Source: Chrysemys picta bellii
Taxonomy: Eukaryota
NCBI RefSeq assembly: GCF_011386835.1
Contig: NC_088794.1
Location: 4,712,001-4,776,000, forward strand
DNA length: 64,000 bases
Direction: 5' to 3'
In this document: positions 397 to 41,482 of the stretch, one piece after another
How the letters are laid out: every line of letters begins with the position of its first letter
Position numbering within the stretch: the first letter of the stretch is position 1
Notes under the pieces: generated by a model
Seen by the model: only the letters and a program-made list of their open reading frames with translations
What the model was told of the DNA's origin: nothing
The model's database searches: none
Translations under genes and position numbers: made by a program

Positions 397-468
397 CTTT
401 AAGAAGTTCTTCCCCCACCATCTCTGGGTCTTGGTGAGTCTCTGATTCCTGGTCTGGATTTGAACCAC
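397..468 (-). CDS. Linker exon (72 nt, phase 1-1) of PYD-URGCP/VLIG paralog C
   Basis: Minus strand ctttctag|GTGGTTCAAATCC...CTTCTTAAAG|gtattt, encoding GSNPDQESETHQDPEMVGEELLK. Same length, phase and similar sequence as the gene A linker exon at 19319-19390. Confidence 0.8.
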
Positions 469-652
469 CTAGAAAGACATTGTGGGTGCTTAAAGATCCT
501 CTTGATTAACTTCTCAGATGCATCTTTGTTCATAGCCACACAAATAAGCCAACTCTAGGAGTGGGAGTCAGTCTCTAATTTCTGCAAAATAGTCTTGACA
601 CATGCAGTGAATTTCTCTTGAATTCTTGGTTCTTAAAGTACATCCCGCATAG

Positions 653-1150
653 AGAACAGGAGTATTTCTGGCACCTTAGAGACTAACAAATTTATTTCAG
701 GTTTCAGAGTAGCAGCCGTGTTAGTCTGTATCCGCAAAAAGAAGAACAGGAGTACTTGTGGCACCTTAGAGACTAACAAATTTATTAGAGCATAAGCTTT
801 TGTGGGCTACAGCTCACTTCTTCAGATGCATAGCGTGGAACACACAGACTGAAGATATTTATACATACAGAGAACATGAAAAGGTGGAAGTACGCATACC
901 AACTGTAAGAGGCCAATCAATTGAGATGAGCTATCAGTAGCAGCAGAAGAAAAAACTTTGAAGTGATAATCGAGATGACCCATAGAAGGTGTGAGGAGAA
1001 CTTAACATGGGGGGAAAAAAAATTCAATTAGTGTAATGACCCAGCCATTCCCAGTCTCTGTTTAGACCTAATTGTGTCTAATTTGCATATTAATTCGAGT
1101 TCAGCAGTCTCTCTTTGGAGTCTGTTTTTGAAGTTTTTTTGTTGCAGTGT
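653..1150. mobile_element. Penelope-like retroelement terminal fragment with partial tandem duplication
   Basis: ggtttcagagtagcagccgtgttagtctg...gcaccttagagactaacaaatttat motif, also at 5386, 35220 and 57725. The hammerhead core on the minus strand is mutated (GAAA->AAAA). Confidence 0.7.
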
Positions 1151-1754
1151 GAATCTGGATGTTTTTACAAGCTGTGCAGCGATGACAAAGGACATTCCCC
1201 ATTAATATGTGTGTATTTATGTGGGTGAGACACCTCTGATTTCTCACTCTGATTTCAAATCATAGTTTAGATCTTATTCATTCCATACTTTCATAGTTTA
1301 GCCCTAGCAATATAGTCTCCCGTTTCTTTGTTTATGCAGACTCTCAGGATTGCTGGGTCAATGTAGCTACATAAATATATTTTTTGGTTTGTACCAAATG
1401 TGGCAAGAACAAAAGCTCACTATGCAGAGGACATATCTCTTGAGGGAAACAAACAGGCGAAAAATCCAAATGTTTTTTTTTGCTTTTGTTGAAAACTGGG
1501 AGAAGGAAAAAGTAAAACGTGGATCTGAAGAGGGAGCAAAGATTACCCAAAAAGTATACAAATACACCTAAAATCTAAGAACTTTCTGGAACCTTCTTGC
1601 AAACTCCTGACATGCCTAAAGTATATGGAGAATTAAGTCCATATTTTATCTAGGCTCGTGCATACACATATGACAAAGCAAATGCTACGCAGGGAAGTTG
1701 CAGAGGAGTGACCATAAGAGAAGGGGTTTTATCCCTCCAGGTCTTGTTTCTTAC

Positions 1755-2028
1755 CCCCTCCTGTTGTTTTTGTCAATCTCTCTGCCAGGTCTTGCTGGTT
1801 TATAGCCCTCAGCACCTTCCTAGTCACCTCCACCCCATCGTCATCCTTGCAGCCACGGAGCAGCTCCTCAGTTAGGTCTCTGGGGTCTGCCACCTGCAGC
1901 GTGCTCCAGGGGATGTTTCCAGAGCCTTCTTGCAACTGAATTTCACTCCGTTTGGATGTAAATGTCTCAAACTCTTCTCCCAGGTCTTCCAGGGTTCCCA
2001 GCAGATGATCTCTCACCGTCTCCTCCAT
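1755..2028 (-). CDS. Pyrin domain (PYD) first coding exon of paralog C (divergent PYD)
   Basis: MEETVRDHLLGTLEDLGEEFETF...DLAERLTK. Acceptor tttgcag| with exon start at 2077 and donor G|gtaaga at 1755. 274 coding nt, phase 1. Confidence 0.85.
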
Positions 2029-12115: not shown

Positions 12116-15100
12116 TTAAAAAGACTCTGAGCTGTTTTTTTGTTTTATGTTAAATGCTTCCTCTAGGCTCTCTAGCGCCTGCTCCTTGGTTATTTTTTTC
12201 CAACCCTGCGGCAGATTTGCTGGCTTAGCCTTGTACTTCTTAGCAAACTTATAGTTGAACCTGTTAAAAACGAACTTCCAGTAGTCAGAAGTGTCGATGC
12301 TGGGATCGGGCTGGATGCGCCATTCTGGGTAATATCGTCGATAATCTTTATAGGGATGAAATTTCTCTTCCGTTTCTGAATTCCTAAATACAGCGTTGGA
12401 AACCACATCGGAAGAACACAAAGAGTACTCAAGCATTCCTGTCCGTTTGTTTTTGCACTGCCCTAATCCCTGAGGCCGATGGACTGTAGCAAAGTGTTCC
12501 GTATGATCCATGCCTCCTGCTTCACAGGGGACTTTACAGAACGGGCACTGCTTCCCGCAGCCCAACACGCAGTTGAAGATTTCATCCTGGGGCTTCATGG
12601 ACAGGTTGGAGAGTTTGGATTCAAATTTCAACTCTTCAAATTCAGCTAAGGTTTCTTTTTCCAGCTCGGGAAGGATGGCCTGAACGTGAGCCGAAAACTG
12701 TGCAGCATTTGCCGTGTTTTTAAACCGCACCACTGCTAGATGGTCCTTGGAAATCACCAAGTCTTTCTGTAACTCTCCACAAAAGGTGTCTAAAAAGTCA
12801 CAGACCGTGCTGGTGCTTTTGTCACGGAGAGACTCCAAAGCAGTCCTGACTTGTTTTATTACTGAGGACAGAATCTCTTTCTCCAGGTGTCGCAACCGCG
12901 CTGTCTGGCTGTAGCGATCTAGCAGGTGTCCTTCTACCCAGATTTTGACAAAACGTTCATAGTTATTAATGTATAGGATATAGGTGTCAAAGTTTTCATA
13001 TTTCAGCAGCTTCTTCAAGACAGTGAACTGGAAAAGGCTTCGGTTTGTATATTCATCATACTGTCCACTGTTGAGAATGTCATCGACTATTTTTAACCCA
13101 AGTCTATTGTTCACATAGTCCACCAGGGCAGGTTTGAGACACCAATGACAGAAATCCCTGGCTCTTGTTTGGCAGGAATCCTTCCCCAAATAAAGATCTT
13201 TAAATGTGGAGAGATACTGCGGTTTTAGTTTCTCCAGAAATAGTTCAGGATCGTTTTCTTTGATGAAGCTTGCTTGCATCTTCTCTAATAAAGGAACCAC
13301 TTCCCCCAAAATGTGAAGCTTCAGGTCAACTTTAAAGCAAGCGCTCGTGTGAAGTTCCTGAACGTCTGCCTCTTGAAGCCTCTCATTGATCATCCTCAAC
13401 AGATTTCTGCTGTAAATTTCATCATAATCTACTTCGCCGTCTGCTATATTTCTAATATAATCTTTGCACTGTTCCATTAATGATTTAACAAGTTCTTCTG
13501 TTTTATGCCAGCATTCCTGTGTGAACCATTCATTCAGGGTCTTAATCCATGGTAAATCTAAGTATTCCTTTTTCATAATGAAAGATTTTGTTCCATAATT
13601 CAATAAATTGCTGTATTCCTGTAGCTTTAGACTGGATGGATTCCCCTGCTTTGCCAGGTCCTCTCTCAGCAGCAACTCAATGTCTTGATAAATTTGCCTT
13701 TCATCCATACAGCCGAGCCGTATTTTTGACACTGTCTCACTCCACATTTCCTCAAACTCCATTTCCAGTTCCTTGTTGTCTGCTTTGTTCTCTCTCATTT
13801 TACAGTCTTCCAAAAGCATGTCCATTTCACCTTCAATTGTTTTTATGCACATAGCCTGAATCGTGTTTTTCTTTCGCCATCCTTTGCTGGCAGTCACCAG
13901 ATTGGAACAAATGGCACGTGAATAACTTGAACTGTGATGTGCAAACGGACGTGAATGCCTAACAAAATCTCCCATGTTCTTGTCTCTAACCGACTGCTTT
14001 ACTGCTGCACTTTGAATCCGCTCCCAAATCCTGTGCGATTCACAGCTCACTTTCTGCTGAGTCTCACTTGTTAAGTTGGTCAGGACACAAGCATCTAATT
14101 TAGCTGGAGGTTGATTCTGGAAGAAAGTTTGTTTTTCAGTTACCCACAGATTCATTTCCTTGCGGAACTCCCATTCCCATCCTACAGACTTTGCAGCTAT
14201 CTTGGTGTAGGCTTCAGTTGTGAAGGGGTTTCTAAAGCTGAAGAGGAAGTCATCATGTTTTAGAGCATTCCACAGACTCTTCACCCATTCGATAAATTGG
14301 GGAATGTCTTTGGGAATGGTGTTAAGTGAATGTTGTCTTACAAATTCAAACAAGCATTTCTTTAGCCCCCACACACTCTCACTGTACCCAGTGTTCACTG
14401 GTGCCATTGGAGGGTCCCCATGCCACTGGCTGGGGATGTACCAATTGTGTTTCTCAGGATCATGGTCCATAATGTCAGAAACCGTAATTTCTTTCTGTAG
14501 TTTTTCCATCTTTGCTGCAGCTACAGTCATTTCATTCAGCTGCTCCACAAGATATTTCTTGTCTCTCATGTTTTGTTCATATGCAGCTACATCATTGACG
14601 TTCTGATGCACAAATTGGCAGATGGGCATGTGCTCCGTTTCCTCCATTCTGAGAAAGGCATGGACCACAATTTGCAGAACATCCTGCATTTTGGTGGCGT
14701 TCTCCATGGCCAGGTTAACGATGGTTATGTCGCTCAGTCCAATCACCAGTGTGGCCAGCTCATTGTCATGTTGATAACTGTCCTCCAGTTTGGCCAGTTC
14801 AGGGGCTTTCAAGCCTTCTGTGTCTATTACAAGGATGAAATCACAGCCCAGTTCCTGCTGAAAGTTCTCTGCCACTTTAATGAGTGACATGAAGGCTCCT
14901 TGCGTACATCGGCCACCGCTCACTGCAAACTGCAGGCCGAACATGGTGTTGAGGAGGGTGGATTTCCCAGTGCTCTGCCCTCCCAGCACCGTTAAAACCA
15001 GCATTTTGGACTTTCCCCCCAGCTTGGCATGGAGCTCAGTCAGAACATCTGTCACCCACTGCAGTGGGATGTTGGATACATCTCCATCGATCAGCTCCAT

Positions 15101-16821
15101 GGGAAACCCTTCCAGCATCAGGTCAGCTGCTAACCTCGGGAAATGAATGAATTTCCTTTGAATTTTTCCCATTTTGCCTTCCTTCACCATTGAGTGTTCA
15201 GCCTCGTAGAACTGCCCCAACTCACGCAGGAAATGCTCCACTCCTAGGGAACTGGCAGAGATGGATTCATCCAGTTCTGGTAGCTTTTGTTCGTTAGGCT
15301 GCAAGTTAGGACGGTTCCCCTTAGCAATGCCATCTAAATTAAATTTCATGCATTTCAGGAAGTAGCGTATTTCCATTTGAGATAGTGTTCCTATTCCACT
15401 GATAAATTTAGTCAAACCATCAGTAAGGTCACATTTATTCTGCTGTGTACGGAACTCCAACAATTTCTCTTTCAGCCTAGATTTATATTCTTCTGTGGGG
15501 ACGTCCCCTTGTCCTTTCAATCTGCACATTTCTCTTTCCACGTTGCTTAAGCTCTTCCACAGGTCCCCTTGCAGTTGCAGTGTTTGCCTCTTGTAATTTC
15601 CAATATCTTTTATTTCTGCCGTGATTTCTTTAACGCGGTTCTTTGCTCTCTGACATTCCTCACAGTCCTCATCCAGATGGATTGAAAGTTCACGTGCGGT
15701 CACAGCCATGCCTTCCATATTCATGTCCTTGTGATGATCGTTCATTATACTTCCTATAGCAGAGCACAACTTTTCCATGAATTCCTCTTTCTTGGTCCCG
15801 ATTTCTTTCTCTAGGACATGCTGTTTACTCAGTTTCAGCACTGGTGCTAATTTATTAAGGAATTCCTGAGTTTCACTCTGTTTGCCAGACTCGTAATTGA
15901 GGATGAAGTAGTATTTAGTGGCTGATCCCTGCAGAGATGATAAGAGCGTGTATTGTCTCTCACTGATGCTCTCAGTAACTATGAACACTGCAGAGGAGAT
16001 CTCTGTTAAAAAGCTGAACTGTAGCCAGTGGGACTCAATATCTCCGCGCAGATTTGTAACCGCGACGGGCTCTGGGAAAAGATCTGAATCCTCATTTCCA
16101 GCAGGGAAATACCAGGAAATCTCGACCAGCCCATCTGCGATTTCCCGAGGGACGTTCCCAGACTCCATGTCCCGATGGATGAAGAAATCATGGTGCTGCT
16201 GGGAGGGGCTGAGAACCTCATTGAGGAGTTTGGACTTGGAGAAGTTGCAGCTCCCCATCCGCACAAAGGAAATGGTTGGCATTGCTGTGAGCACCAGGCT
16301 CTCCTCTCTGAACCCTCTGCTCTCTGCCAGGGAGTGCGGCCTCCACTTTCTCACAATGTCCCTCATGGCCCACAGCATTAGGGTGCACTTGGGGGTGTCG
16401 AGGGCAGGTAGCAGCAGAGGGAGGGCAAACTGGCACATGGACATTTTGGACAGGATCTCCTGCTGTAGGAAACTGTCTGAGCAAAGCAGAACGGCGCAGA
16501 GAACATCGAGGGGGTGCAGAGAAGCTCTAGCGTCCATGTTGCTATAATGAAGAACATTGCCACCATCGCCTTGTCCCCCATTGTCGTCACTGCTTGCTTT
16601 GTCAGCAGATGCTCCCTGCCCAAAGCTTGTGTTTCTGGCGGTCCCATTCAAAGCTATGACCTTCCTCAGAAAATGCCACGGTAAATCCCCTAATGCCCGA
16701 GGAGTCCAGTTCTGTAGACTTTCTGGGTTGATTTCCTGGAGTTCTCTCAACCCCAGCTTCGTGCTTCTGTGCTTCTCCATCTTCAGCTTGGACAGGAGGT
16801 CCTGGAGTGCTCTCCTTCTCT
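12116..16821 (-). CDS. URGCP/VLIG-type very large GTPase exon, gene A terminal exon
   Basis: Uninterrupted ORF over 1550 aa. URGCP-like N-region (KMSMCQFALPLLLP, REIADGLVEISWYFP), P-loop GGQSTGKS, GRCT, DTEG, FVHQN, and C-terminal CGKQCPFCKVPC motif. Acceptor ctttctgcag| at 16821, phase 1. Confidence 0.93.
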
Positions 16822-17231
16822 CTGCAGAAAGAGGTTAAAGCATGAGCAGGTTTCAGAATCCCTCTGGTATTAAATATACCTGTTTTGAACGTGTTTATTC
16901 TGACACGTATCAGTGAAGTGATGGGAATTATCTGTTTGCAACCCCTGCTAATGCAGTCTGGCTCTTTTTCCTGCACTAGAACCTGGAACACATATGGAAG
17001 TTTGAGTCTGCTATAGCCTCCAGGCTATGGAAACTGGGTTCTTTTGCCTAGCCAGGGGAGAGTCATGCTTTTAAATCAAAGGTCCCAGGTTCAAGCTCTG
17101 CTAACTATGACCCAACCTTGGGTGGTGTTCTGAGTGCACTTTCCGTATTGATTTCAAATCTCCCCTTTCTTTATTTTTTTGTGAAGGGTGGTTCAGAGCA
17201 AAAAGCTGCATTTTCTTGCCCGTGTTTCTTA

Positions 17232-17500
17232 GGCTATGTCTGCACTGCCGGCTAAATCGATACAGCGGTGTTGATTTAGTGGGTCTAGTGAAGGCACAGT
17301 AAGTCAATGGCAGAGCGCTCTCCCGTCAACATCTGTACTCCACCTCCCCGAGGGGCAGAAGCTATTTCAATGAGACAGTATCTCCCATCGACATAGGTCG
17401 ACTTACAGTGGTGTCTATACCATGCTAAGTTGCATCAACTTCAGTTACGTAACTGAAGTAGTGTAACTTAGATCAACTTTCAGCATTAGTGTAGACCAGC
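17232..17500. mobile_element. Harbinger-like MITE
   Basis: ggctatgtctgcact ... agtgtagaccagccc terminal inverted repeats. Confidence 0.7.
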
Positions 17501-19318
17501 CCTTAGTATGTAAACACAAGTTCCCCCTGGCATGAACACTCTAGGAAACTGGAAGTTGACATACCAAAGCCTTCCTTTTTACAATCTCATTCTAGTCAAA
17601 TTATTGACAGAAGTACTGTTAATCTAGTGCTTCAACAGGCATTACACTGACTCTTACCATGACACGATGTTTCCATTAAAATAAGAAAGATTCAAATGTA
17701 TTCAGTGTCCATGCTAGAAAATGGTTCCTCAACAATTAAACCCCATTCCAGCGGCCGATACGCTCAAAACATAGCTAAAAAAAGAAAAAAACTAATTTCT
17801 GCTGTAGGCCAAAGTTTGCTTCCCAAAATGCATTTACAACAGACAGCCACCACTGCTGCTAACCCAAACCAAAACTCACTGAGTTCCCCTTCTAGGCCTA
17901 GACCTTTTCCGTTCACATGCACACACCACTGGATGGAGAAAGGGAAGCCAGCTGCCTTAATGTGACATGCTCTGTTTAACTTCACATTCATGACACACAT
18001 AGATATGGTCATACAGTCAAAGCGAATGTGATGAGGGTCACATCTTCAATTAAGGAGTGATGCGTATTCATACCTCAAATACGGATAGAGAAATTTGGGA
18101 TGCTGTCTCTCACACTGACCCACTTCTGTGGTCTCATGCCCCCTTTTTTGCTTCCTTTTTACCAGTAGATAGCGCTCTCTGGGATGAACTGGGGGGACAT
18201 TTTTGTCATGAAAGCAAAAAAAAAAAAAGTATCAACTCAAACCAGTGGGGTCTCACCCTAATTTTTTCTGGCCCTGAGGTGCTTCCAACAAAACATGCAG
18301 TTGGAAATTTTGCTCTCTCTCCTCTCATTCCAACCATGAGGCTCCATGGGCCTTGAAGGCCGGTCCCCAGGTGGCCTTCGCATCCCAGCCCTCATCCAGC
18401 CACTTGTTAGTAAGCGATGGGCTGAGAATGACTAATGAAACCCTAGCCCCATCAGAAGCACCGCCTATGGGAGTCATGACTGGAGGAGCGGCTGAGCTTT
18501 TTAAGCCAGAAAGAGACACAGGAAGTTGTCTGTGCAACGAGGTGAACTCCTGGCTGGCTGCTATGTCGGTCTCTGCCTTCTCGCCGAGCCCTGAGCCCAG
18601 CTTCCCTGCCTTGCTCCTGGTTCCTGCCTTCCAACGTTGTTTGTGATACCTGCCCCGGGTCTATGACTCTCGTGCCGGTCTGACCCTTGGCTTGACTCCC
18701 GACTCCAGCTCTGACCACTAGGTCTGACTGTTCAAGTCCTGGTCATGATGCCAACCATGAAATCTCTTCCCAGTTTCTCTCCTAAGTTCCAGGACTATGG
18801 AAATGGCCATGTTTAGCCTGGAAGGGCTAGGCGCTTACCAGATTTCACAAGGGGGACTGAGTCACCTACAACCAACATTTTAGCACCACTGGCATTCACA
18901 AAACCTCTGCCCAGCTGCTGCCTTATGCTGTAGGTGCCCAAAATCCCCGAGGAGCCCAAGTTTCAACCAGTAAAGTCCCTGAGGCAGCTCAGTTTCGGCA
19001 GCTGGGCCTGCGCGCAGACACCTACATCTTGACGCTGCCCAGCAGCTTTGTGTCTAACTAACATACCAGCCCTGGTAGGACTCAAATTCAGCCTTCCCCT
19101 GCCTAGATCGCCCAGACTGGTCAGTGTGCTAAAGCATGTCTACTAGAGTAAACCTCTTGTTATATCTAGTGGGTTGCTCACTGTCTTAAGATATAAAAGA
19201 TCTGGGTTCAATCCCCACTCTGCCACATGCCTTACTGGCTAAAATTGCTGGGAATCAACTCATACTGAAAGTCATTCCATAAATGTGTTTATCTAGATAC
19301 AGAAGAGGAATTACCTAC

Positions 19319-19390
19319 CTTTAAAAAGATCTTTCTCCTCCAACTCTGGACCTTGCTGAGTGTCTGATTCCTGTTTGGAGTTTAAAGCAT
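19319..19390 (-). CDS. Linker exon (72 nt, phase 1-1) of gene A
   Basis: ttttctttgctag|ATGCTTTAAAC...CTTTTTAAAG|gtaggtaa, encoding DALNSKQESDTQQGPELEEKDLFK. Keeps the PYD and GTPase exons in frame. Confidence 0.8.
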
Positions 19391-20447
19391 CTAGCAAAGA
19401 AAATCAGAGAGACAAACACATATTGGTTCTATGTTTATATAATCGCTGTGCATTTTCTCTATCGACTTACGTGTGTCTGTGCATTTCCCCACCTTTGGTT
19501 TTATTAGGAACAATCTGAGCATGATGACGAACTGTTTAAAATTCCATGAAAATAATCTGACACAAGCAGGTCACACCAGGGAGGTGGAAACTGTTGGTAG
19601 AAGACCACACCTTAACTTTTGGTAAGCCAAAGTTGGACACAAGGCACACGATGACTCAATTGAAATGGAAACTATTTTTTAAAAAAAGCATTGACTAAAA
19701 ATGCAGAAAGTTTCAAATAATAGGTAAGAAAAGCAAAATGAAAATAAGAAAAATATGCACGTTACATTGAAAGGTCAGGATAATCGTCTCCCTTTTACAG
19801 ATGGGGAAACTGAGGCACAGATCTGGGAAGTGATGGCAGAGCTGGGAGTAGAACCCAGACAGTCATGATCCCAGAACCAGTGAAAGGAAAGAGCTGCAAC
19901 CACAGGTTCCGACTCCATGAGTGCTCCAGGGTGCAAGCACCCATGGGAGAAAAACATAGTGGGTGCTCAGCACCCATCAGTCACAGCTGTTCAGAGGCGC
20001 CACCGATCAGCTGTTAGAGGGGGCTGCCAATCAGCTGTTTGGTGGCTGGGGGAAGCACTTGGGGGAGGGCAGAGAGCAGCAGGTGGCGGGCAGGCGGGGG
20101 CCTCGTGGGAGGGGTTGGAGCAGGGGCAGGAAGAGGCAGAGTGAGGGCAGGGTCTCAGGGGAAGGGGTGGAGTGGAGTCAGGGCCTCATGGTGGAGTAGG
20201 GGCGCAGCGTCCCCAGGGAAAACGAAAAGTCAGCCCCTATGGCTGTAATGAAAATCAAGAGAGCATCTGAGGCATAAAGAGGTCAGAGGGGACATTTCTC
20301 CTGCTTGAAGAGCTTTGCACAAACTTATCAAGGGGAAACCATTAGAAAGGAAAGAAACTGCACCTGGGGAGTGAGAAAGGAAAGCAAATCCAGAAGTGAA
20401 GAATATTCAGGGTGGGGGGCTGATTTTTTCCTGGGGTTGCCACTTAC

Positions 20448-20724
20448 CATTTCCTGTTGCCTTGGCGAGTTTCTCTGCTAAATCCCTCTCGTTTATTGAT
20501 TTCAGCGCCTCCACGGTCACCTCCACCGCGTAATATCCTTCGTAGCAGCTGATCAGCTTGTCAGTGAGGTCAATGACATCCACTTTCTTCAGTGTCCCAC
20601 GGCCGATATGTTCATATCCCTCCTTCAGTGGCATTTCGTGCAGTTTGAACTTGAACTTCTTGAGCTCATCTTCCCCCAGGTCTTCCAGGGTCAGCAGCAG
20701 ATGATCTCTCAGGGTCTTCGCCAT
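20448..20724 (-). CDS. PYD first coding exon of gene A (ASC-like PYD)
   Basis: MAKTLRDHLLLTLEDLGEDELKKFKFKLHEMPLKEGYEHIGRGTL...DLTDKLISCY. Donor G|gtaagt, 277 nt, phase 1. Acceptor with exon start at 20787. Confidence 0.92.
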
Positions 20725-30315: not shown

Positions 30316-30592
30316 ATGGAGAAGACTGTGACCGATCTCCTGCTGGAGACCCTGGAAGAGCTGGGGAAAGATGACCTCAAGCGATTCAAGTGGAAGCTGA
30401 AGGAAATCAAGGTGGAAAACCAGTATAACAACATCCCCTGGGGCAAGCTGGAGACAGCACGTCCTGTGGATGTCGCCAAGGAATTGCTCAACTACTACGG
30501 GGAGCACTACAGGGTGGAGGTGACCATTCAAGTGCTGAGATCCATCCACCGGAGAGACCTGACAGACAGACTCACCAAGGCAACACAAGCTG
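30316..30592 (+). CDS. PYD first coding exon of gene B
   Basis: MEKTVTDLLLETLEELGKDDLKRFKWKLKEI...IPWGKLETARPVDVA. Acceptor ccctag| with exon start at 30306, donor G|gtaagg. 277 nt, phase 1. Confidence 0.92.
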
Positions 30593-31719
30593 GTAAGGGA
30601 GTGACCAAGTTCCTTCCCCATACGTAGGCTCCCATGGGCTTTGGGATTCTGCTGCAGGATCTAAGCATCATTGTTGCAAAAATATCACAGATCTAGCCTT
30701 TATAATGGCTTAAAAATATGAACTGTGTGTGGCGATGTCTGCCCGAATCTGCAGACAACCTGGAACAAGAGCATTGAGATTCATCTCAAAGCTGCTGGTG
30801 AATCCTGATGTCTGAACCCTAATGACAGAATGCCAACATTGTTAACTCTTTAGGTGCTGATAATTTAAGGAGAAACATCCAGCGAATCCCACAATCCTTC
30901 ATTACCTCTTACCACCGTAGAAGCCCCCCGGGTCCCTTTCCCAGCTGCCGAAATCTGCAACAGCATCTGCAGTGCAGTTGTGTGATTTCAAGGCAAAGTT
31001 ATGCGGCATATTGAAAACTAAGACTTATAGGGCAGTGTGAGATGCACTGAACTGAATATCAGATAAAATCGCCCAGGAATTACAATATTGATTGTGTTAT
31101 TCATTTATGCATTTAAGTCAATGAAACGCCTCTGTTTTTAAGAAGCTATTGGATCGCTAGTTTGCAATACCAGAGAACCACAGAACTTGAGGGACCTTGC
31201 TGCAGAATTTAGGCCACAGAATATAAGGGACCCTGGCTTACAATTGGACACCCAGCTGCACCACCTCTGCAGTTTTACAAGCTATTGTCAGATCCTTCTT
31301 AACTACTGCACTAGCAGCTGAAAGCCAACTGGGCCAAGTAATCCACCATCTGTGCAGTCTCCTCCACACAGCCAATGACATTGTTGTATGCAGATTAGCT
31401 GTAGAGTAAGGGTGCTGATTGGCTGAGCTACCTCTGACATCACAACTGCCTAAAACTTCTGGCATGGCATAGCTACATGCCTTGCTTTTGTGCAGGTGTA
31501 ATTTGTAAAGTCAAAATGGCTGTGACTTAAAAATTGGACAGTACCAATCCGTGAAACCCAGCGGTGATTGGTAATAGTCTGAACAGAAAGTGCTCTGGCT
31601 TCAGAGTGACGCACAGACAGAGACAATCCTGGAATCTTCTCATATAGATAATCCTACCTTCCAAGGAAACTTGCAAAGGAATAAAATTGGGCATGTGCCC
31701 TTTTTTTGGTGCTTTACGA

Positions 31720-32600
31720 GCCTTGTTTTGAACACAAGTTCCCTTTTAGGAGGGATGTTGAAAAATTGGAGAGGTACAGAGAAGAGCCACAAAAATGAGT
31801 AAAGGGCTAGAAAATATGTCTTGCAGCGAGAGACTTATGGAGCATAATCTGATTATTTTATCAAAAAGAAGATCCTAAGGTGACTTGAGGACAGTGGGGA
31901 GGAAATATCAGGTACTAAATGGCTCTTTAACCTAGCAATGAAAGGCAGAACTAGACCTAATGGATTCGAAGTTAAAACCAGATATATTCTAATCAGAAAT
32001 AAGGCACCATTTTTGTTGGGGGGTGGGTGATTAACCATTGGAACTAATTCCCCTGAGAAGTGGTGGATTCTCCATCCTTTGATGGTGTCCAATCCTGCCT
32101 GGATGTCTTTCTAAAAAATGCTTTAGTCAAACACAAGTTACTGGGCTCAGTGCAGGGGTAACTGGGTGAAATTCTCAGGCCTGTGTTACACAGGAGGTCA
32201 GACTAGATCAGGGATCAGCAACCTTTGGCACGCAGCTAGCCAGAGTAAGCACCCTGGCGGGCCAGGCCGGTTTGTTTACCTGCCCCATCCGCAGGTTCTG
32301 CCGATCACGGCTCCCACTGGCAGCGGTTCGACGCTCCAGGCCAATGGGGGCTGCAGGAAGCGGCGTAGGCTGAGGGATTTGCTGGCTGGCGCTTCCCACT
32401 GCCCCCATTGGCCTGGAGCGGTGAACCGCGGCCAGTGGGAGCCACGATCGGCAGAACTTGCAGACGCAGAAGGTAAGCAAACCAGCCCAGCCCGCCAGGG
32501 TGCTTACCCTGGGGAGCCGCATGCCAAAAGTTGCCAATCCCTGGACTAGATCATTTGACGGTCTCTTCTGGCCTCAAACTCTGTGAATCTAAGAAAAAAA
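31720..32600 (+). mobile_element. Degraded CR1 3' fragment interrupted by a hAT MITE
   Basis: CR1 C-terminal and UTR motifs on both sides of 32209-32543. Confidence 0.7.
32209..32543. mobile_element. Charlie-type hAT MITE
   Basis: cagggatcagcaac ... gttgccaatccctg with a perfect 8-bp TSD GACTAGAT. Confidence 0.9.
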
Positions 32601-32744
32601 TCCTCTCCTCTAAAAAGGCACACAACGTGTTTGCTGGCTTATTGGCAAGCCACATATATACATGTTTTGGGCAGGTCAGCACCCAGCCTCATTACGATAC
32701 ATTTGGGAGCTGGAATGAGGAGCAGGAAATAAGACTGAAAATCA

Positions 32745-33260
32745 TTGACTCATAGAAATGTCAGGCTGGAAGGGACCTCGAGAGGTCATCTACTCCAGCC
32801 CCCTGCGCTGAGGCAGGACCAGGTAAACCTAGGCCAACCCTGAGAGGTGTTTGTCCAACCTGTTCTTAAAAATCTCCAGTGATGGGGATTCCACAACCTA
32901 CCTTGGAAGCCTGGTTCAGAGCTTAACCGCCCTTAGAGTTAGAAAGTTTTCCCTGATATCTAACCTAGCTCTACCATGCTGCAGATTAAGTCTGTTACAT
33001 CTTGTCCTACCCTCAGTGGACATGGAGAGCAACTGATCACTGTCCTCTTTATAACAGCCCTGAACATATCTCAAGACTGTTATCAGGTCCCGCCTCGGTC
33101 TTCTTTTCTCAAGACTAAACGTGCCCAGTGTTTTTAATCTTTCCTTATAGGTCAGGTTGCTCTCCACTTTCTCCAGTTTATCCACATCTTTCCTTAAGCA
33201 TGGCACCCAGAATTGGACACCGTGCCGAGTAGAGCAGGACCATTACTTCCCATGTCGGAC
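32745..33260 (-). mobile_element. CR1 3' fragment
   Basis: tcatagaaatgtcaggctggaagggacc tail; the 32916-33206 minus translation is the CR1 ORF2 end. Confidence 0.9.
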
Positions 33261-33276
33261 ATACAACACACCGACC

Positions 33277-34414
33277 TGTTCATACACCTGTGGCGCTTTG
33301 GGGCTTCACCCAGATCAGGATTGGATTCTGTCAATGTTGCCCTGGAACCCCGGGTGCCTCCTGCTGTGTAGCTTTAGCTCTGAGCCCTGATGCCAGCCAT
33401 GTGTCCACCGCACAAAAGTCTCACCCTGAGCTACTGCCAGCCCAGTTACTCCTTGCAGGTTGACCCCCAATGCCCCCCTCTGTCCTGAATCTCCCCCAAA
33501 CTGTCTCCCCTGTCATGTTCCTCTCACTGGACACTCAGAGTTAACACCACATTCGCTGCCTCCCGAGCCAGGGCACACCACAGCTTGTTAGCTCAGCGGG
33601 GGTGATACACTCCACCTTAATGCACTACCCTGAGACAATCTGATGTAAAACTAAGGCTAAGTTGATTAACAAAGAACATAGATTGATGTGATTTCAAGCC
33701 AGAGTAAAAGGGGCATGAAAGGGTTACAAAGCAAAACACGCTTTCGAATGTCAAAACTGAATTGTAGCAAGATATAGCTTCGACTATTATTATTGTTACG
33801 TCAATTTGTCAGCTTTCTTCAGGCCTGTTTTAGCAGGAGGACCCATTTTGCACGAATACAAAGCATGGCTTCTTCGTTCTCTCAGGTGATGGATTCCTCA
33901 AAGTTGTTCAGCAGTTCCTAATATCCCCAAATTTTATCTTTGTCTTAAAAGTTAGGAAGCACTCCCGGGGGCTCAGCTTTCTAGGTCCACCAGGGAGCGG
34001 ACACCAGGTAAATTTTCTCCTGTGATTTACAATGCAAATGATCCTCCTGAAATCTCCCATGCAAATGAATAACCCATGGACCCTTTCTCTGGTCACACCT
34101 AGTTTGATCTGCAATTGAGCGCAAGAGATGTTTGCCCTTCCCCTGCTTTGACTTATTTGTCCGTTTATAGACTCCAAATAGTAATATCAGAGAATGCCCA
34201 TCATTTCACAAACAGCACTGTTGCATAGATTTCACACTGATATTAATGATCAGCATGTTATTAGTTTTCAAATGATATACTACAAGACACCTTTTAAATG
34301 AATATCATGACAACAGTGTGTGAGGTTTATGAGCTGGTCAGGCCAGCTAAGACTTATGGTTACATACCAGGAGCACCTTGCCGTCTGGCATTGGGGTGCT
34401 CTTAGGGTCATAAC
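33277..34414 (-). mobile_element. LTR (Gypsy-like) inserted into CR1
   Basis: Ends ...gggtcataaca and splits the CR1 pieces at 32745-33260 and 34415-34725. Boundaries approximate. Confidence 0.55.
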
Positions 34415-34725
34415 ACCCCAGAATGATATTAGTCTTTTTTGCAACTGCATCATATTTGTTGACTCATATTCAATTTGTGATCCGCTCTAACCCCCAGATC
34501 CTTTTCTGCAGTACTGCTGCCTAGACAGTTATTCCTCATTTTGTAGTTGTGCATTTGATTTTTCCTTCCTAAGTGAAGTACTTTGCACTTGTCTTTATTG
34601 AATTTCACCTTGTTGATTTCAGACCAGTTCTCCAAGTTGTCAAGGTTGTTTTGAATTCTAATCCTGTCCTCCAAAGTGCTTGCAACCCCTCCCAGCTTGG
34701 TGTCATTTGCGAACGTTATAAGCAT
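34415..34725 (-). mobile_element. CR1 RT fragment
   Basis: FANDTKLGGVA...FNKDKCKVLHLG translation. Confidence 0.9.
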
Positions 34726-35219
34726 GATGCGTGCATCCTTCAGCAACATTGAAAGGCACAGTAAAAAATCTAGGGGCGGGCAAAGGGAATGTTCCGCTTC
34801 ATTCCCTGCACCTGATTCGCTGCCTCTATGACAATACTAAGTTTCTGACCTGGGTTTACTTCACTCCAGCAGCTGGGACTAGGGTGGAAATATTTCTGCC
34901 GTTCTGGCTGCTCAACACATATGGTGGGACTGGTCGGCAGCCCGCCAATGCAGCTCCAGAGACAGGCAAATGGGATGCACCATATGAGTGGGTGGAGGAA
35001 GCGGGAGCAGGCAGGCTCCTACCATGGATGAACGGGGGCAAGAGAAACAGGAAACCCCACATAAAAAATAGGGGGTTCAAAAAATGGCGGAGGCCAAGTG
35101 GAAGAATGTGTGCTGTGATTGGTGGAAACGCATCACAGAGAGGGACGGGGAAGTTCAGGAAGGGGAGAGAGAGAAGGAGAATAGGCCATTTGCACAATAA
35201 GAAGGAACAGGGATCCAGA

Positions 35220-35341
35220 GCTTTCTCTGTGTGTGTAAAAAGAAGAACAGGAGTACTTGTGGCACCTTAGAGACTAACAAATTTATTAGAGCATAAGCTT
35301 TCGTGGACTACAGCCCACTTCTGTGTGTGTGTGTGTGTGTG
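35220..35341. repeat. Penelope end fragment plus (TG)n microsatellite
   Basis: agaagaacaggagtacttgtggcaccttagagac... followed by tgtgtgtg. Confidence 0.75.
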
Positions 35342-35429: not shown

Positions 35430-35546
35430 ATGTTTTAAATCTGGAGCTGGAATCAATGACGCCACAAAACCCAGAGCCAGGGGAGACAGATGGGTCCAAT
35501 CTGGAGCAAGAATCCAATATGCAGCGGATGCCAGCCTCTTTCAAAA
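35430..35546 (+). CDS. Linker exon (117 nt, phase 1-1) of gene B
   Basis: tttcttgctag|ATGTTTTAAAT...TTCAAAA|gtactg, encoding DVLNLELESMTPQNPEPGETDGSNLEQESNMQRMPASFK. Its start resembles the gene A linker acceptor. Confidence 0.7.
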
Positions 35547-37175: not shown

Positions 37176-40100
37176 AGCGGAGGAGAACATTCCAGGGCAC
37201 CCTGTTCAAGCTGAAACTGAAGAAGTACAGAAGCAGGAAGCTCACATTACGTGACCTCCAGAAAATCGGCCCGGAAAGTCTAAAGGAGTGGACGGCTCAG
37301 ACCTTAGGGGACTTACCGTGGTATTTCCTGAGGAAGGTGATGGCTCTGAATGGGACGACCAGAAACACAAGCCTTGGCCAGGGGGAGCTTGAAGATGAAG
37401 CAGTCAGTGAGGATGAGGAGGAACTGGATATTGAGGATGATTTTTTTTCTCTTAATGACACTTGCACTAGTGATTCCCTGCACCCCCTCGATCTTCTCTG
37501 TGCTGTGCTGCTTTGCTCGGACAGTTTCCTACAGCAGGAGATCCTGTCCAGAATGTCCATGTGCCAGTTTGCCCTCCCTCTGCTGCTACCCGCCCTCGAC
37601 ACCCCCAAGTGCACCCTAATGCTGTGGGCCATGAGGGACATTGTGAGGAAGTGGAGGCCGCACTCCCTGGCAGAGAGCAGAGGGTTCAGAGAGGAGAGCC
37701 TGGTGCTCACAGCAATGCCAACCATTTCCTTTGTGCGGATGGGGAGCTGCAGCTTCTCCAAGTCCCAACTCCTCAATGAGGTTCTCAGCCCCTCCCAGCA
37801 GTACCACGATTTCTTCATCCATCGGGACATGGAGTCTGGGAACATCCCTCGGGAAATCGCAGATGGGCTGGTCGAGATTTCCTGGTATTTTCCTAATGGG
37901 AGCAAGAATTCAGATCTTTTCCCAGAACCCATTGCGGTTACAAATCTGCACGGAGACATTGAGTCGCACCAGCTGCAGTTCAGCTTTTTAATGAAGGTAT
38001 CAACTCTTATGATCATATTTGTTGAAAGACTCAGTGAAAGGGAATATGTTCTTCTATTGTCTCTGAAGGAAGCAGGCACAAAAGTGTATTTTATGCTCAG
38101 TTCTGAGGCTGAGAAATCAAAGGACATGTTGGGCTTCCTTAAAAAGCTAGTTCTGGATCTGAAACTGAGTAAATCACACCTATTGTTCAAACAGAGCACA
38201 ACTAACCAGGCACAGCTTGTGAAAAAGCTGCGCTCTACCATTGGAAGAATCACAAAGTTTCCTCAGAGGCGCGTGACTATGGAAGACATGGCTGAGACGG
38301 CTCGGGAACTAGGAATCCAGGTAGATGAGGACTGCGAAGAATGTCAGCGCGCCAGCAAGTGCGTTAAAGAAATCACTGCGGAAATAAAAGACGTGGCAAA
38401 GTACAAGAGGGAAATGCTGAGACTGCAAGGGGATCTCGGGAAGACTGTGGCTAAAGTGGAAAAAGAGCTGTGTCGAATACGGAAACCAAGGACAGCCCAC
38501 TTAGAGAAATATGAATCTGAGTTGAAAGAAAAATTGGTGGCATTACACAAAGAAAAGAATCAGTGGGACCTTACTGATGGTTTGGTTCAATTTATCAGTG
38601 GGATAGCATGTCTCTCCCAAGTGGAAAGATGTTATTTCCTGAAATGGATGAAGCTTAGCCTGGATCACATTACAAGGGGGAATCTTACTAGCTTACAAGC
38701 AGAGTATAAAGAGAAATGTAAAACTTCAGAGAGCGACCCACAAGAGCTATCAGAACTCGGTAAAATAATCTCGGCCAGATCCTTAGGGTCTGAGCATTTC
38801 ATGCGTGAGTTGGGGCAATTCTACGAGGCTGAACATTCAAGGGTGAAACAAAGCAAAATAACAGAAAGCCAAAGACAATTCATCCATCTTCCAGGCATAG
38901 CAGCTGACCTGATGCTGGAAGGGTTTCCCATGGAGCTGATCGATGGAGATGTATCCAACATCCCACTGCAGTGGGTGACAGATGTTCTGACTCAGCTCCA
39001 TGCCAAGCTGGGGGGAAGGTCCAGAACGCTGGTTCTAACGGTACTGGGAGGGCAGAGCACTGGGAAATCCACCCTCCTCAACACCATGTTCGGCCTGCAG
39101 TTTGCAGTGAGCAGTGGCCGATGTACACGAGGAGTCTTCATGTCACTCATTAAAGTGGCAGAGAACTTTCAGCAGGAGCTGGGCTGTGATTTCATCCTGG
39201 TGATAGACACAGAAGGCCTGAAATCCCCTGAACTGGCCAGGCTGGAGGATAGTTATGAACACGACAATGAGCTGGCCACCCTGGTGGTTGGACTGAGTGA
39301 CATAACCATTGTTAACATGGCCATGGAGAACGCCACCGAAATGAAGTATGTTCTGCAAATTGTGGTCCATGCCTTTCTGAGAATGGAGGAAATCGGGCAC
39401 AAACCCAACTGCCAGTTTGTGCATCAGAACGTCAGTGATGTGTCTGCGCATGAACAAAACATGAGGGACAGGAAAAACCTCCTGGAGCAGCTGGATGAAA
39501 TGACCAAAGCTGCAGCAAAGATGGAGACGCAAATCAAGGAAATGGCAATTTCGGATATTATGGACTATGATCCAGAGAAACACAACTGGTACATCCCTGG
39601 GCTGTGGCATGGAGTCCCTCCCATTGCTCCAGTCAACATAGGATACAGTGAGAGGGTGTGTGAGTTAAAGAATTACCTGTTTGACTTTACAAAATCTTGC
39701 TCGGCTAACAGATCCCTTAAGGACATCCCCCAGTTTACTGAAAGGCTGAGAAGCCTGTGGAACACTATAAAACATGAACATTTCAGCTTTAGCTTCAAAA
39801 GCAGGTTTGTAGATGAAGTCTATAACCAGCTGTCTATGAATTATGCAGAGTGGGAATGGGGTTTCCGCAAAGAGATGCATCTGTGGGTATCTGAAAAAGA
39901 AACTTTCATCCTCAACCAGCCAGCAGCAGACCTAAATTTCTCTGTCTTTAAAAACATAGCACTGGAAAAACTGCAGTATGGTGAGCAAAAGATCATGGAC
40001 TGCTTACAACAATATTTTGCAAGGAAGGCCTCAGACCTGCACCTAATGGAAAAGTACAAAGAAGATTTTATAAGGAGCACTAAAACACTCAAGAATGACC

Positions 40101-41482
40101 TTAAAACCCACGTGTTCAGCAAATGCGAAGAAGCCATTCTTACTCAAATAGGCAGGCTGAAGTCACACGACATACACATTAACTACATGAAAATTATTGA
40201 AGGGGAAATCGATCAGTTATTGGCAAACTGCAGGAGGAGCACACAGCAACTAGATGACAAGAAACTGGAGTCCAAATTTGAAACAGTATGTCACGAAACA
40301 TCACTCTGTCCTCTGCAGAACTGCCAAGTTGAGGGAGATATGGAGGCCCAGTTGAGAAAGGACCTGATGAATCGAAGGAGTGCCATCACAGAGATGCTAC
40401 AAGGAGCAGGAAGCCTGAAGGATTACAGAATGAACTCATTCAAGATGAAATCTAAGTATTTGGAAAAATGGCTGATACAAAGAGCAGGGTTGCACAAAGA
40501 TAGTTACCTTCAAAAAGCAAAAGCTATTGCTAAATCACTGATGGATCAGTGCCAGGATTACATTCAAGAAAAGGTCATTTCCAAAACAGACTATGACAAA
40601 ACCTACTGCAGGGAATTGCTGCGCATGATCAATGAGAGGCTCCAAGAGGTGGATGTTCGGAAATGTTATACTAATGCATTCTTCGAAGTTGACCTGAAGC
40701 TTCACGTTCTGGGGGAAGCGGCTCATGAGTTTCAAAAGATGCATGAAGTATTTATCCAGGAACACAATCCCCAGAAACATCTGGAGAAGTTTAAACCTCA
40801 GTACTTCTCCCGATTCAAAGATCTTTATTTAGGGAAGGATTCCTGCCAAAAGAGGGCCAGGGATTTCTGTGAACATTGTCTCAAACCTGCCCTGGTGGAC
40901 TACGTTAAGAAAAGAATCACAATAGAAATAGTGGATGACTTCCTCAGCAGTGGGCAGGCCATTAAATATGGCTGCAAGATCTTTTTCCAGTTTACCGTGG
41001 AGAAGAAGCTCCTGGAAGATGGGAACTTCAACAACTATCTGAATTACATTAACAGCTATGAAGAGTTTGTCCAAAGCTGGATCCACAGACACCTGTTAGA
41101 TTACTATAACAAGACTGATGGCTTGGTAGTCCCGGAAAGAGAGATTCTAGCCACAATAGTAAACAAAGTGAGAGGAGTTTTGGAACACACCAAGGACATA
41201 AAGCCTAACTCGGTCTCTGCTTTCTTAGATGACTTTTGCAAAGCACTGGAGCAGGATCTGGTCATTTCCAAGGACAGCTTAGTGGGGATACTGTTCAAAA
41301 ACACAGCAATGGCCCAGCAATTTTCTGCAGACATTCAGACCTTGCTGCCTGACCTGGAACAGCAAATCTTATCTGAATTTAAGGAGCTGGAGCTGGAGTC
41401 AAAACTCTCCAACCTGCCATTGAAGCCTCAGGATGAGATGTTCAAGCAAGTTTCTGGATTTGCAGAAGCCTCCATTCCCTGA
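37176..41482 (+). CDS. URGCP/VLIG-type very large GTPase exon, gene B terminal exon (C-terminally shortened)
   Basis: Acceptor ctttccacag| at 37176, phase 1, homologous to gene A (ERRR..Q..L.KLK). Intact GGQSTGKS, GRCT and DTEG. The ORF ends about 150 aa earlier than A. Confidence 0.9.

What the first reader, a model, noticed from the sequence alone, without database searches (positions are those of the whole stretch)
12116..20724. PYD fused to an intact very-large GTPase (URGCP/VLIG): candidate new inflammasome-type sensor
Seen: three exons (PYD 20448-20724, linker 19319-19390, GTPase 12116-16821) with canonical splice sites, all phase 1, joining into one open frame of 5055 nt (about 1684 aa). 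The PYD is strongly ASC-like (ELKKFK.KL...PL.EGY..I.RG.L...D..DLTDKL.S.Y). The GTPase keeps G1 GGQSTGKS, GRCT and G3 DTEG, plus a Cys/His-rich tail. Known: mammalian URGCP and GVIN1 have no PYD. CARD6 pairs a CARD with a URG4-like region, and a teleost GBP-CARD fusion engages ASC, so death-fold/GTPase fusions have precedent, but a PYD version is not a characterised family to my knowledge. Inference: an interferon-induced GTPase that oligomerises on a pathogen surface and nucleates ASC filaments directly through its PYD.
Basis: partly seen in the sequence, partly recalled or inferred. Interest (0 to 1): 0.92.

Follow-up and report, generated by a model that had tools for sequence, protein, structure and literature searches.

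The report
ASC-type pyrin domain on giant GTPase
This is a real, intact painted-turtle gene that joins an ASC-like pyrin (death-fold) domain to an interferon-type "very large" GTPase; it is already in RefSeq and conserved across turtles but unstudied, and it may link pathogen-coating GTPases directly to inflammasome signalling.

Summary
Three minus-strand exons (20448-20724, 19319-19390, 12116-16821) join with GT/AG sites, all phase 1, into a 1684-aa frame. That protein is letter for letter RefSeq XP_005279425.2 of Chrysemys picta bellii ("up-regulator of cell proliferation-like isoform X1").

- **Domains.** Exon 1 is a full Pfam PYRIN domain, closest to ASC and POP1. It is 60-63% identical to turtle ASC PYDs and keeps the residues whose mutation stops human ASC filaments. 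Exon 3 carries URGCP, URGCP_GTPase (P-loop and DTEG intact) and the Cys-rich tail.
- **Conservation.** The 277 + 72 + ~4.7 kb exon plan recurs in three further turtles tested at DNA level. Full-length PYD-bearing models exist in 15 turtle species. PYD dN/dS is 0.31-0.44, like the rest of the gene.
- **Family.** The window holds three such genes. Turtle PYD-VLIGs form one turtle-only clade among CARD-VLIGs, which are common in reptiles and amphibians.
- **Origin.** The exon plan copies that of the ASC gene, which suggests exon shuffling.

Not shown: junction-spanning RNA, interferon induction, ASC binding. No paper on the architecture was found in nine searches. It is a new variant of a known kind: annotated but uncharacterised. 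The inflammasome-sensor reading is plausible but untested.

The parts
20448..20724 (-). Gene A exon 1: start codon plus ASC-type pyrin domain (277 nt, phase 1, donor GTAAGT)
   Evidence: (PF02758, E 5.7e-25)
19319..19390 (-). Gene A exon 2: 72-nt linker, phase 1 to phase 1, predicted disordered
   Evidence: 72 nt in four turtles; dN/dS 0.20-0.34; pLDDT below 50 over residues 96-110
12116..16821 (-). Gene A exon 3: whole VLIG/URGCP body including the stop codon
15620..16519 (-). URGCP domain (PF25496), residues 218-517
   Evidence: coordinates checked
14381..15538 (-). URGCP-like GTPase domain (PF25683), residues 545-930
   Evidence: coordinates checked
14960..14983 (-). G1 P-loop GGQSTGKS (residues 730-737; catalytic Lys is K736)
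14813..14824 (-). G3 motif DTEG (residues 783-786)
12524..12559 (-). Conserved Cys motif CGKQCPFCKVPC of the GVIN1_C tail (residues 1538-1549)
   Evidence: (PF26772 precomputed)
30316..30592 (+). Gene B (head-to-head paralog) exon 1: PYD, 277 nt, phase 1
35430..35546 (+). Gene B exon 2: 117-nt linker
37176..41482 (+). Gene B exon 3: VLIG body. The spliced product is 1566 aa, as annotated. It lacks the Cys-rich GVIN1_C tail.
1755..2028 (-). Gene C exon 1: PYD, 274 nt, phase 1. Ortholog of Terrapene P0012 (93% identity).
397..468 (-). Gene C exon 2: 72-nt linker. The GTPase exon lies beyond the left edge of the window.

Best explanation
**Shown.** This is a functional three-exon gene of the painted turtle encoding an N-terminal ASC-type pyrin domain, a short disordered linker and a complete very-large-inducible-GTPase body (URGCP_N, URGCP, URGCP_GTPase, GVIN1, Cys-rich GVIN1_C). 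It belongs to a turtle-specific, tandemly duplicated PYD-VLIG subfamily that sits inside the wider CARD-VLIG radiation of tetrapods.

**Inferred from gene structure.** The fusion arose by exon shuffling. The first two exons of an ASC-like gene (a 277-nt phase-1 PYD exon and a short phase-1 linker exon) came to splice onto the single large VLIG coding exon, in the place of ASC's CARD exon.

**Inferred mechanism.** The GTPase body self-assembles in a nucleotide-dependent way, as human GVIN1 does when it coats bacteria. This clusters the PYDs, which then seed ASC PYD filaments and so caspase-1 activation. The protein would thus be both sensor or coat and inflammasome nucleator. Gene A keeps the full ASC interface. 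Paralogs B and C have changed it and may signal differently or not at all.
For: **Gene model**
- Open spliced frame with canonical splice sites.
- Identical to RefSeq P0129.
- Annotated on the chromosome as PYRIN + URGCP_N + URGCP + URGCP_GTPase + GVIN1 + GVIN1_C.

**Constraint**
- Full-length PYD-bearing models in 15 turtle species.
- The same 277/72/~4.7 kb exon plan in 3 further genomes.
- dN/dS for the PYD is 0.31-0.44, against 0.25-0.42 for the URGCP, GTPase and middle segments and 0.11-0.26 for the tail.

**Expression (indirect)**
- Fourteen small runs guessed to be RNA, from 5 studies, hold 0.5-0.89 of the PYD-exon words.
- The ten of them also listed for the intron-containing 4.3-kb stretch hold only 0.07-0.17 of its words.

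**ASC-likeness**
- PDB sequence search and fold search.
- 52-58 of 92 residues identical to turtle ASC PYDs.
- Mutating E13, E19, K21, K26, R41, D48, D51, L68 or L73 abolishes human ASC filaments (PMC7830601). All nine positions are kept in gene A, with L68 as V exactly as in turtle ASC. This holds in 12 of 15 turtles; Terrapene has M at L68, Carettochelys has E19D, R41W and D54E, and Pelodiscus keeps all nine and differs only at flanking charged sites (D6E, K22R, D54E).

**Exon shuffling**
- The Mauremys ASC gene has a 277-nt phase-1 PYD exon with donor GTAAGG, a 57-nt linker exon and a CARD exon.

**Single turtle clade**
- VLIG-core tree.

**Precedents**
- Human GVIN1 forms a coat on bacteria (bioRxiv 10.1101/2025.03.24.645074; PMC12133148).
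- Zebrafish Gbp4-CARD needs Asc and its own GTPase activity (PMC4932187).
Against:
- RefSeq also lists a PYD-less isoform (P0127, 1554 aa). The share of transcripts carrying the PYD is unknown.
- No ISRE or GAS excess near the gene.
- The only Chrysemys "ASC" entry retrieved is a tandem 2xPYD protein with no CARD. A canonical ASC partner in this species was therefore not shown here.
- PYD-PYD binding, GTPase activity and coat formation are all untested.
- An ASC-like PYD can also be inhibitory: POP1, an ASC regulator, is an equally good match.
Confidence: 0.45

Rival explanations
1. The PYD serves as a regulatory or recruitment tag rather than a nucleator. It docks the GTPase onto ASC or other PYD filaments that already exist, making the GTPase an effector brought to specks. 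Alternatively it caps or sequesters ASC, as the PYD-only protein POP1 does, and so damps inflammasome output.
For: POP1 (ASC2), a known ASC regulator, matches the domain as well as ASC does by sequence and by fold. PMC7830601 describes ASC2 as a negative regulator of ASC polymerisation. Reptile genomes hold many ASC-like PYD proteins: the 2xPYD Chrysemys protein and multi-PYD lizard proteins.
Against: Both opposite type-I surfaces are kept: the acidic one (D6, E13, D48, D51, D54) and the basic one (K21, K22, K26, R41). That fits incorporation and elongation better than one-sided capping. A 1600-aa oligomerising GTPase is an unusual body for a simple decoy.
Confidence: 0.2
2. The PYD acts only within the family. 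It mediates homotypic PYD-PYD polymerisation among VLIG molecules (A, B, C), strengthening coat or lattice formation on a target with no link to ASC or caspase-1.
For: Three PYD-VLIG paralogs sit side by side. B and C have lost ASC-critical residues (R41W in both; D48R and D54K in B; K21E and K22T in C) yet keep open PYD exons. This suggests the PYD has a use that does not need an ASC-type interface. GVIN1 works by coat formation.
Against: Gene A has kept the full ASC interface in nearly all of 15 turtle species. That is most simply explained by a conserved ASC-type partner. CARD-VLIGs and Gbp4-CARD point towards adaptor or caspase signalling.
Confidence: 0.2
3. The fusion is an annotation artefact. 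The PYD and linker exons belong to a separate PYD-only (POP-like) transcript, and the GTPase is made only as the PYD-less 1554-aa form from the internal ATG at 16780.
For: A PYD-less isoform is annotated (P0127). PYD-only fragments that read into introns exist in databases (P0157, P0164). No junction reads were obtained.
Against: - Phase-compatible GT-AG exons with the same lengths occur in four turtle genomes and in all three paralogs here.
- The linker exon is open and under purifying selection.
- The 41 codons of exon 3 upstream of the internal ATG (16781-16821) stay open.
- Independent annotations in 15 species give the same model.
Confidence: 0.07

Closest known systems
CARD-VLIG proteins of reptiles and amphibians (RefSeq "interferon-induced very large GTPase 1-like") and mammalian CARD6
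   Same: An N-terminal death-fold domain precedes URGCP_N/URGCP, with or without the GTPase. CARD-VLIGs made up 56 of the 120 best hits, from turtles, crocodilians, squamates, tuatara and amphibians. The CARD6 cluster is CARD + URGCP_N + URGCP. The turtle PYD-VLIG clade is nested among them.
   Different: Here the death fold is an ASC-type PYD, not a CARD. The expected partner is therefore ASC's PYD rather than a CARD protein. These relatives too appear to be uncharacterised functionally in the library searched.
Zebrafish Gbp4 (GBP with C-terminal CARD)
   Same: An interferon-type large GTPase fused to a death-fold domain. Its antibacterial function needs Asc and its own GTPase activity (PMC4932187). 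It is the best functional analogue.
   Different: It belongs to a different GTPase family (GBP, not VLIG). The death fold is C-terminal and a CARD. There is no homology outside the dynamin-like G-domain superfamily.
Human GVIN1 (and URGCP)
   Same: The same VLIG body: URGCP, URGCP_GTPase, GVIN1 and GVIN1_C domains, encoded in one large exon. GVIN1 forms an antimicrobial coat on Burkholderia thailandensis.
   Different: The literature read here mentions no death-fold domain on GVIN1 (no occurrence of CARD, PYD or pyrin). Its known function is reported as coat formation, not inflammasome signalling.
ASC (PYCARD) and POP1/ASC2
   Same: The PYD is of the ASC subtype: 60-63% identical to turtle ASC PYD, with RMSD 0.8-1.0 A to ASC and POP1 structures. 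Filament residues are kept. The gene plan is the same: a 277-nt phase-1 PYD exon followed by a short linker exon.
   Different: The third exon is a 4.7-kb VLIG GTPase instead of a CARD, so the protein cannot recruit caspase-1 by itself.
Pogona vitticeps XP_020662938.3 (P0238)
   Same: A PYD lies directly upstream of URGCP and the GTPase domain.
   Different: FIIND and UPA domains precede the PYD. Its VLIG core sits in a squamate clade and its PYD nests among squamate ASC PYDs. It is therefore an independent fusion, or a merged gene model.

Membership tests
Pyrin domain (PF02758), ASC subtype | Full-length match to the Pfam PYRIN profile above the gathering score | tested here: met
   87.7 bits against a cut-off of 22.9, profile positions 1-76 of 76
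Pyrin domain (PF02758), ASC subtype | Death-fold helical bundle that superposes on solved PYDs | tested here: met
   AF2 model with mean pLDDT 74 (about 76-87 over the PYD itself). Best PDB matches are cPOP1 and ASC PYD, TM 0.90-0.95, RMSD 0.8-1.0 A.
Pyrin domain (PF02758), ASC subtype | Closer to ASC than to NLRP, AIM2 or pyrin PYDs | tested here: met
   ASC and POP1 E about 1e-18, pyrin 2e-14, NLRP3 1e-7. 52-58 of 92 residues identical to turtle ASC. In the PYD tree its position relative to the sauropsid ASC clade is unresolved.
Pyrin domain (PF02758), ASC subtype | Residues required for ASC filament formation (E13, E19, K21, K26, R41, D48, D51, L68, L73) | tested here: met
   All are kept in gene A, with L68 as V as in turtle ASC. 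They are not all kept in paralogs B and C.
Pyrin domain (PF02758), ASC subtype | Physical PYD-PYD binding or co-polymerisation with ASC | not testable with these tools
   The one co-fold job gave no verdict. This counts neither for nor against.
VLIG / GVIN / URGCP giant GTPases | URGCP domain plus URGCP-like GTPase domain | tested here: met
   E 1.6e-125 and 2.2e-182, both covering the full profile
VLIG / GVIN / URGCP giant GTPases | Intact nucleotide-binding motifs (G1 GxxxxGKS, G3 DxxG) | tested here: met
   GGQSTGKS at 730-737 and DTEG at 783-786. Among the 120 relatives, 120 have a G1 motif and 108 have DTEG.
VLIG / GVIN / URGCP giant GTPases | C-terminal GVIN1 and GVIN1_C region with a Cys-rich motif | tested here: met
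   Precomputed PF25974 and PF26772. CGKQCPFCKVPC is conserved from amphibian to turtle relatives.
VLIG / GVIN / URGCP giant GTPases | Interferon inducibility | tested here: inconclusive
   ISRE-like and GAS patterns are at or below chance in the window. The only nearby ISRE-like site (19662-19672) lies in intron 1. No expression data under stimulation were available.
Inflammasome-forming sensor (functional class) | An ASC (PYD+CARD) adaptor in the same organism | tested here: inconclusive
   Canonical 196-aa ASC was found in Mauremys, Pangshura, Gopherus, Chelonoidis and Pelusios. The Chrysemys entry retrieved is 2xPYD with no CARD. PMC11258412 states that turtles retain components lost in birds.
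Inflammasome-forming sensor (functional class) | Stimulus-dependent oligomerisation that nucleates ASC and activates caspase-1 | not testable with these tools
   Requires cell or in-vitro reconstitution

The most novel reading that the evidence does not exclude
Turtle PYD-VLIGs are true inflammasome sensors: a pathogen-coating giant GTPase directly seeds ASC filaments through an ASC-derived PYD. Together with the widespread CARD-VLIGs, this would make giant GTPases a further, ancient class of death-fold signalling receptors alongside NLRs, ALRs, pyrin and CARD8. Mammalian GVIN1, URGCP and CARD6 would then be the separated remnants of that class.
Probability: 0.3. Interest if true: 0.85.

Novelty: new variant of a known kind. 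Interest (0 to 1): 0.6.

Why it matters
Giant VLIG/GVIN GTPases are the least understood interferon-inducible GTPases. A first cell-biological function, a GVIN1 coat on bacteria, was reported only in 2025.

A conserved, selectively constrained fusion of this body to an ASC-type PYD makes a concrete, testable proposal: in non-mammalian tetrapods these GTPases signal through death-fold polymerisation. CARD-bearing versions across reptiles and amphibians point the same way.

The locus also gives a clean example of exon shuffling that builds an innate-immune receptor, with ASC exons 1-2 joined to a single-exon GTPase. It provides natural variants for structure-function work: gene A keeps the full ASC interface, while genes B and C have altered ones.

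It is not a new gene. It is an annotated but uncharacterised architecture.

Tried and rejected
- **RNA junction test.** No junction evidence was possible.
- **Co-fold.** Gene A PYD (1-92) with Mauremys ASC PYD (1-92) gave no verdict, score 0.00, and the controls were not run. This counts neither for nor against binding.
- **Region-limited homolog search.** A search on the PYD of P0129 returned only three orthologs, so it gave no wider view of PYD-VLIGs.
- **Exhaustive PYD search.** The 150 best hits were mostly multi-PYD reptile proteins and ASC orthologs. Only one further PYD-VLIG turned up, Pogona P0238. Clustering at 50% identity probably hides others.
- **ISRE and GAS scans.** At or below chance level.
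- **Look-up of the PYD+linker fragment P0157.** Tried as a possible transcript contig; it is not on record.
- **Atlas feature search.** It gave CARD6 and URGCP clusters and no PYD-bearing cluster.
- **Literature.** Nine searches found no description of a PYD-VLIG or CARD-VLIG architecture. The GVIN1 paper does not mention CARD, PYD or pyrin.
- **Similarity of the linker and the start of exon 3 to ASC's linker and CARD start** (F-x-D/E-R-R/H-R). I judged it too short and low in complexity to count.
- **Other ORFs in the window.** None had a Pfam match apart from reverse-transcriptase fragments.


Full report
**1. The observation**

The stretch 20449-20724 (minus strand) translates to an open 92-residue peptide starting with Met. 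Joining 20448-20724, 19319-19390 and 12116-16821 gives 5055 nt, that is 1684 codons and a terminal stop, with no internal stop. The donors are GTAAGT and GTAGGT, both acceptors are AG, and every junction is in phase 1.

Pfam places a complete PYRIN domain on exon 1 (E 5.7e-25, profile positions 1-76 of 76). It places URGCP (E 1.6e-125) and URGCP_GTPase (E 2.2e-182) on exon 3. Four motifs were verified by translation at the coordinates listed under parts:
- the P-loop GGQSTGKS (residues 730-737);
- GRCT, with T756;
- DTEG (residues 783-786);
- the Cys motif CGKQCPFCKVPC (residues 1538-1549).

**2. Identity of the gene**

The window is from Chrysemys picta bellii chromosome CM062321.1, at about 4.72-4.73 Mb. 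A PYD-less 1554-aa form (P0127), starting at the internal ATG at 16780, is also on record.

On the assembly the product is precomputed as PYRIN + URGCP_N + URGCP + URGCP_GTPase + GVIN1 + GVIN1_C. So the gene model is not new. What is missing is any study of it.

**3. Is the fusion real?**

I could not obtain junction-spanning reads. The evidence is therefore comparative and indirect, but consistent.

- *Other species.* Full-length PYD-bearing models of 1671-1684 aa exist in 15 turtle species. These cover Emydidae, Geoemydidae, Cheloniidae, Dermochelyidae, Chelydridae, Carettochelyidae and Trionychidae.
- *Exon plan.* From the genomic DNA of Lepidochelys, Pelodiscus and Carettochelys I rebuilt the annotated proteins exactly. 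Each used a 277-nt PYD exon, a 72-nt linker exon and a terminal exon of about 4.7 kb, all with GT-AG sites.
- *Selection.* Pairwise dN/dS against Chrysemys is 0.31-0.44 for the PYD and 0.20-0.34 for the linker. The URGCP, GTPase and middle segments give 0.25-0.42 and the C-terminal tail 0.11-0.26. dS is similar along the gene. The PYD and linker exons are therefore constrained coding sequence that evolves together with the GTPase.
- *Expression.* Fourteen small runs, guessed to be RNA, from five studies and three species labels, hold 0.5-0.89 of the PYD-exon words. The ten of them that were also listed for the 4.3-kb stretch containing both introns hold only 0.07-0.17 of its words, and exons make up 0.156 of that stretch. 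This fits a spliced, expressed PYD exon. The run type is only a guess, and the junction itself is not shown.

**4. A gene family, not a singleton**

The window holds three PYD exons.
- *Gene A* is the finding.
- *Gene B* lies head-to-head with A: 30316-30592, 35430-35546 and 37176-41482 on the plus strand. It splices in phase 1 into 1566 aa. That equals the length of the annotated neighbour, which carries PYRIN but no GVIN1_C, and the Cys motif is indeed gone.
- *Gene C* has its PYD exon at 1755-2028 and a 72-nt linker at 397-468 on the minus strand. The rest runs off the left edge. It is the ortholog of Terrapene P0012 (93%).

In a FastTree of the VLIG core (122 rows), the nine turtle PYD-VLIG database proteins plus genes A and B (11 rows) fall in one turtle-only clade of 28 rows (SH-like support 93). 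That clade is nested among CARD-VLIGs, and gene A's orthologs form a group with 100% support.

CARD-VLIGs are 56 of the 120 best hits. They occur in turtles, crocodilians, squamates, tuatara and amphibians.

A lizard protein (Pogona P0238) has the order FIIND-UPA-PYD-URGCP-GTPase. Its core sits in a squamate clade, and its PYD nests inside squamate ASC PYDs with support 98/93. It is therefore an independent fusion or a merged gene model.

**5. The PYD is of the ASC type, and its exon plan is ASC's**

- *Sequence and fold.* The best solved relatives are ASC and POP1 (E about 1e-18), then pyrin (2e-14) and NLRP3 (1e-7). An AF2 model (pLDDT about 76-87 over the domain; linker residues 96-110 disordered) superposes on cPOP1 and ASC PYD at TM 0.90-0.95 and RMSD 0.8-1.0 A. 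Identity to turtle ASC PYDs is 52-58 of 92 residues.
- *Filament residues.* According to PMC7830601, the single mutations E13A, E19A, K21A, K26A, R41A, D48A, D51A, L68A and L73A abolish human ASC filament and speck formation. Gene A keeps all nine positions, with V at L68 as turtle ASC itself has, along with D6, K22 and D54. All nine are kept in 12 of the 15 turtle orthologs. Terrapene has M at L68. Carettochelys has E19D, R41W and D54E. Pelodiscus keeps all nine and differs only at the flanking charged positions (D6E, K22R, D54E).
- *Paralogs differ.* Gene B has R41W, D48R and D54K. Gene C has K21E, K22T and R41W.
- *Gene structure.* The Mauremys ASC gene consists of a 277-nt phase-1 PYD exon (donor GTAAGG), a 57-nt linker exon and a CARD exon. 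This is the same plan as the PYD-VLIG genes, with the VLIG exon in the CARD exon's place.

I infer exon shuffling from an ASC-like gene. ASC and PYD-VLIG genes lie on the same chromosome in Mauremys and Pangshura. The PYD tree leaves the exact donor unresolved.

**6. How it most likely works**

*Shown:* an intact PYD with an ASC-type interface, an intact G domain, and long-term constraint on both.

*Inferred from family knowledge:*
- Human GVIN1 assembles into a coat on cytosolic bacteria (10.1101/2025.03.24.645074 and PMC12133148).
- Zebrafish Gbp4, a GBP with a CARD, needs Asc and its own GTPase activity for its function (PMC4932187).
- PYD sensors nucleate ASC when clustered (PMC7830601).

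The most likely mechanism follows from these. Nucleotide-dependent self-assembly of the VLIG body clusters the PYDs, and the clustered PYDs seed ASC filaments. I put this at about 0.45.

Three rivals remain:
- a regulatory or recruitment role like that of POP1 (0.2);
- purely intra-family PYD polymerisation that strengthens a coat (0.2);
- an annotation artefact, with a separate PYD-only transcript (0.07).

*Weak points:*
- There is no motif evidence for interferon control.
- The co-fold gave no verdict.
- A canonical ASC was retrieved for five other turtles. For Chrysemys, however, the entry named ASC is a 2xPYD protein with no CARD, 2.3 Mb away. PMC11258412 used Chrysemys as its turtle and reports that turtles retain inflammasome components lost in birds, but I could not see its per-gene call for ASC.

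**7. Comparison with what is known, and novelty**

The protein is a member of the VLIG/GVIN/URGCP family, and all sequence criteria for that family are met. Its N-terminal domain is a member of the ASC-type PYD group.

Death-fold fusions to interferon-type GTPases are already known: Gbp4-CARD, CARD6, and the annotated CARD-VLIGs. The PYD version exists in public annotation. Nine literature searches found no description or functional study of a PYD-VLIG, nor of CARD-VLIGs as a class.

I therefore class it as a new variant of a known kind. It is still a good, testable lead, and I score it 0.6.

Noticed in passing
window 30316-41482 (+): Head-to-head paralog B also has a PYD exon (277 nt), a 117-nt linker and a VLIG exon, giving 1566 aa. 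It ends before the Cys-rich GVIN1_C tail, and its PYD carries R41W, D48R and D54K at ASC-filament positions.
   Followed up: partly
window 397-2028 (-): A third PYD-VLIG gene (C): PYD exon 1755-2028 and 72-nt linker 397-468. Its GTPase exon lies off the left edge. It is the ortholog of Terrapene P0012 and Chelonia P0013, and its PYD has K21E, K22T and R41W.
   Followed up: partly
L001 (Chrysemys CM062321.1, 6.999-7.025 Mb): The RefSeq protein named ASC in Chrysemys (XP_005279423) is two tandem PYDs with no CARD. An ASC-like CARD exon (about 55% identical to turtle ASC CARD) lies 8 kb upstream, inside a model annotated as PYD + C2H2 zinc fingers. The locus looks mis-modelled or rearranged.
   Followed up: partly
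L002 (Mauremys reevesii CM027979.1, 146.49-146.54 Mb): The ASC locus holds three PYD exons (10001, 13375, 44846), one linker exon and one CARD exon. The RefSeq protein P0355 looks like a chimera of the first two PYD exons.
   Followed up: no
proteins P0150-P0153, P0159: Lizard proteins carry 8-17 tandem ASC-like PYDs, for example Hemicordylus LOC128331728 with 11 PYD stretches in 1136 aa. This is either a large reptile expansion of ASC-type PYD exons or a set of merged gene models.
   Followed up: no
protein P0046 (Mauremys mutica, 2102 aa): This model joins PYD + RING + B-box (pyrin/TRIM-like) to a complete VLIG body. It is either another death-fold/TRIM-VLIG architecture or a read-through model.
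   Followed up: no
window 58043-58972 (-): An intact single-exon olfactory receptor gene (7tm_4, E 8e-53).
   Followed up: no
window 49926-50516 (+) and 52725-53219 (-): Reverse-transcriptase (RVT_1) ORF fragments, probably LINE remnants.
   Followed up: no
window 19662-19672 (+): The only ISRE-like site near gene A (GAAATGGAAAC) lies in intron 1. The count across the window is at chance level.
   Followed up: yes
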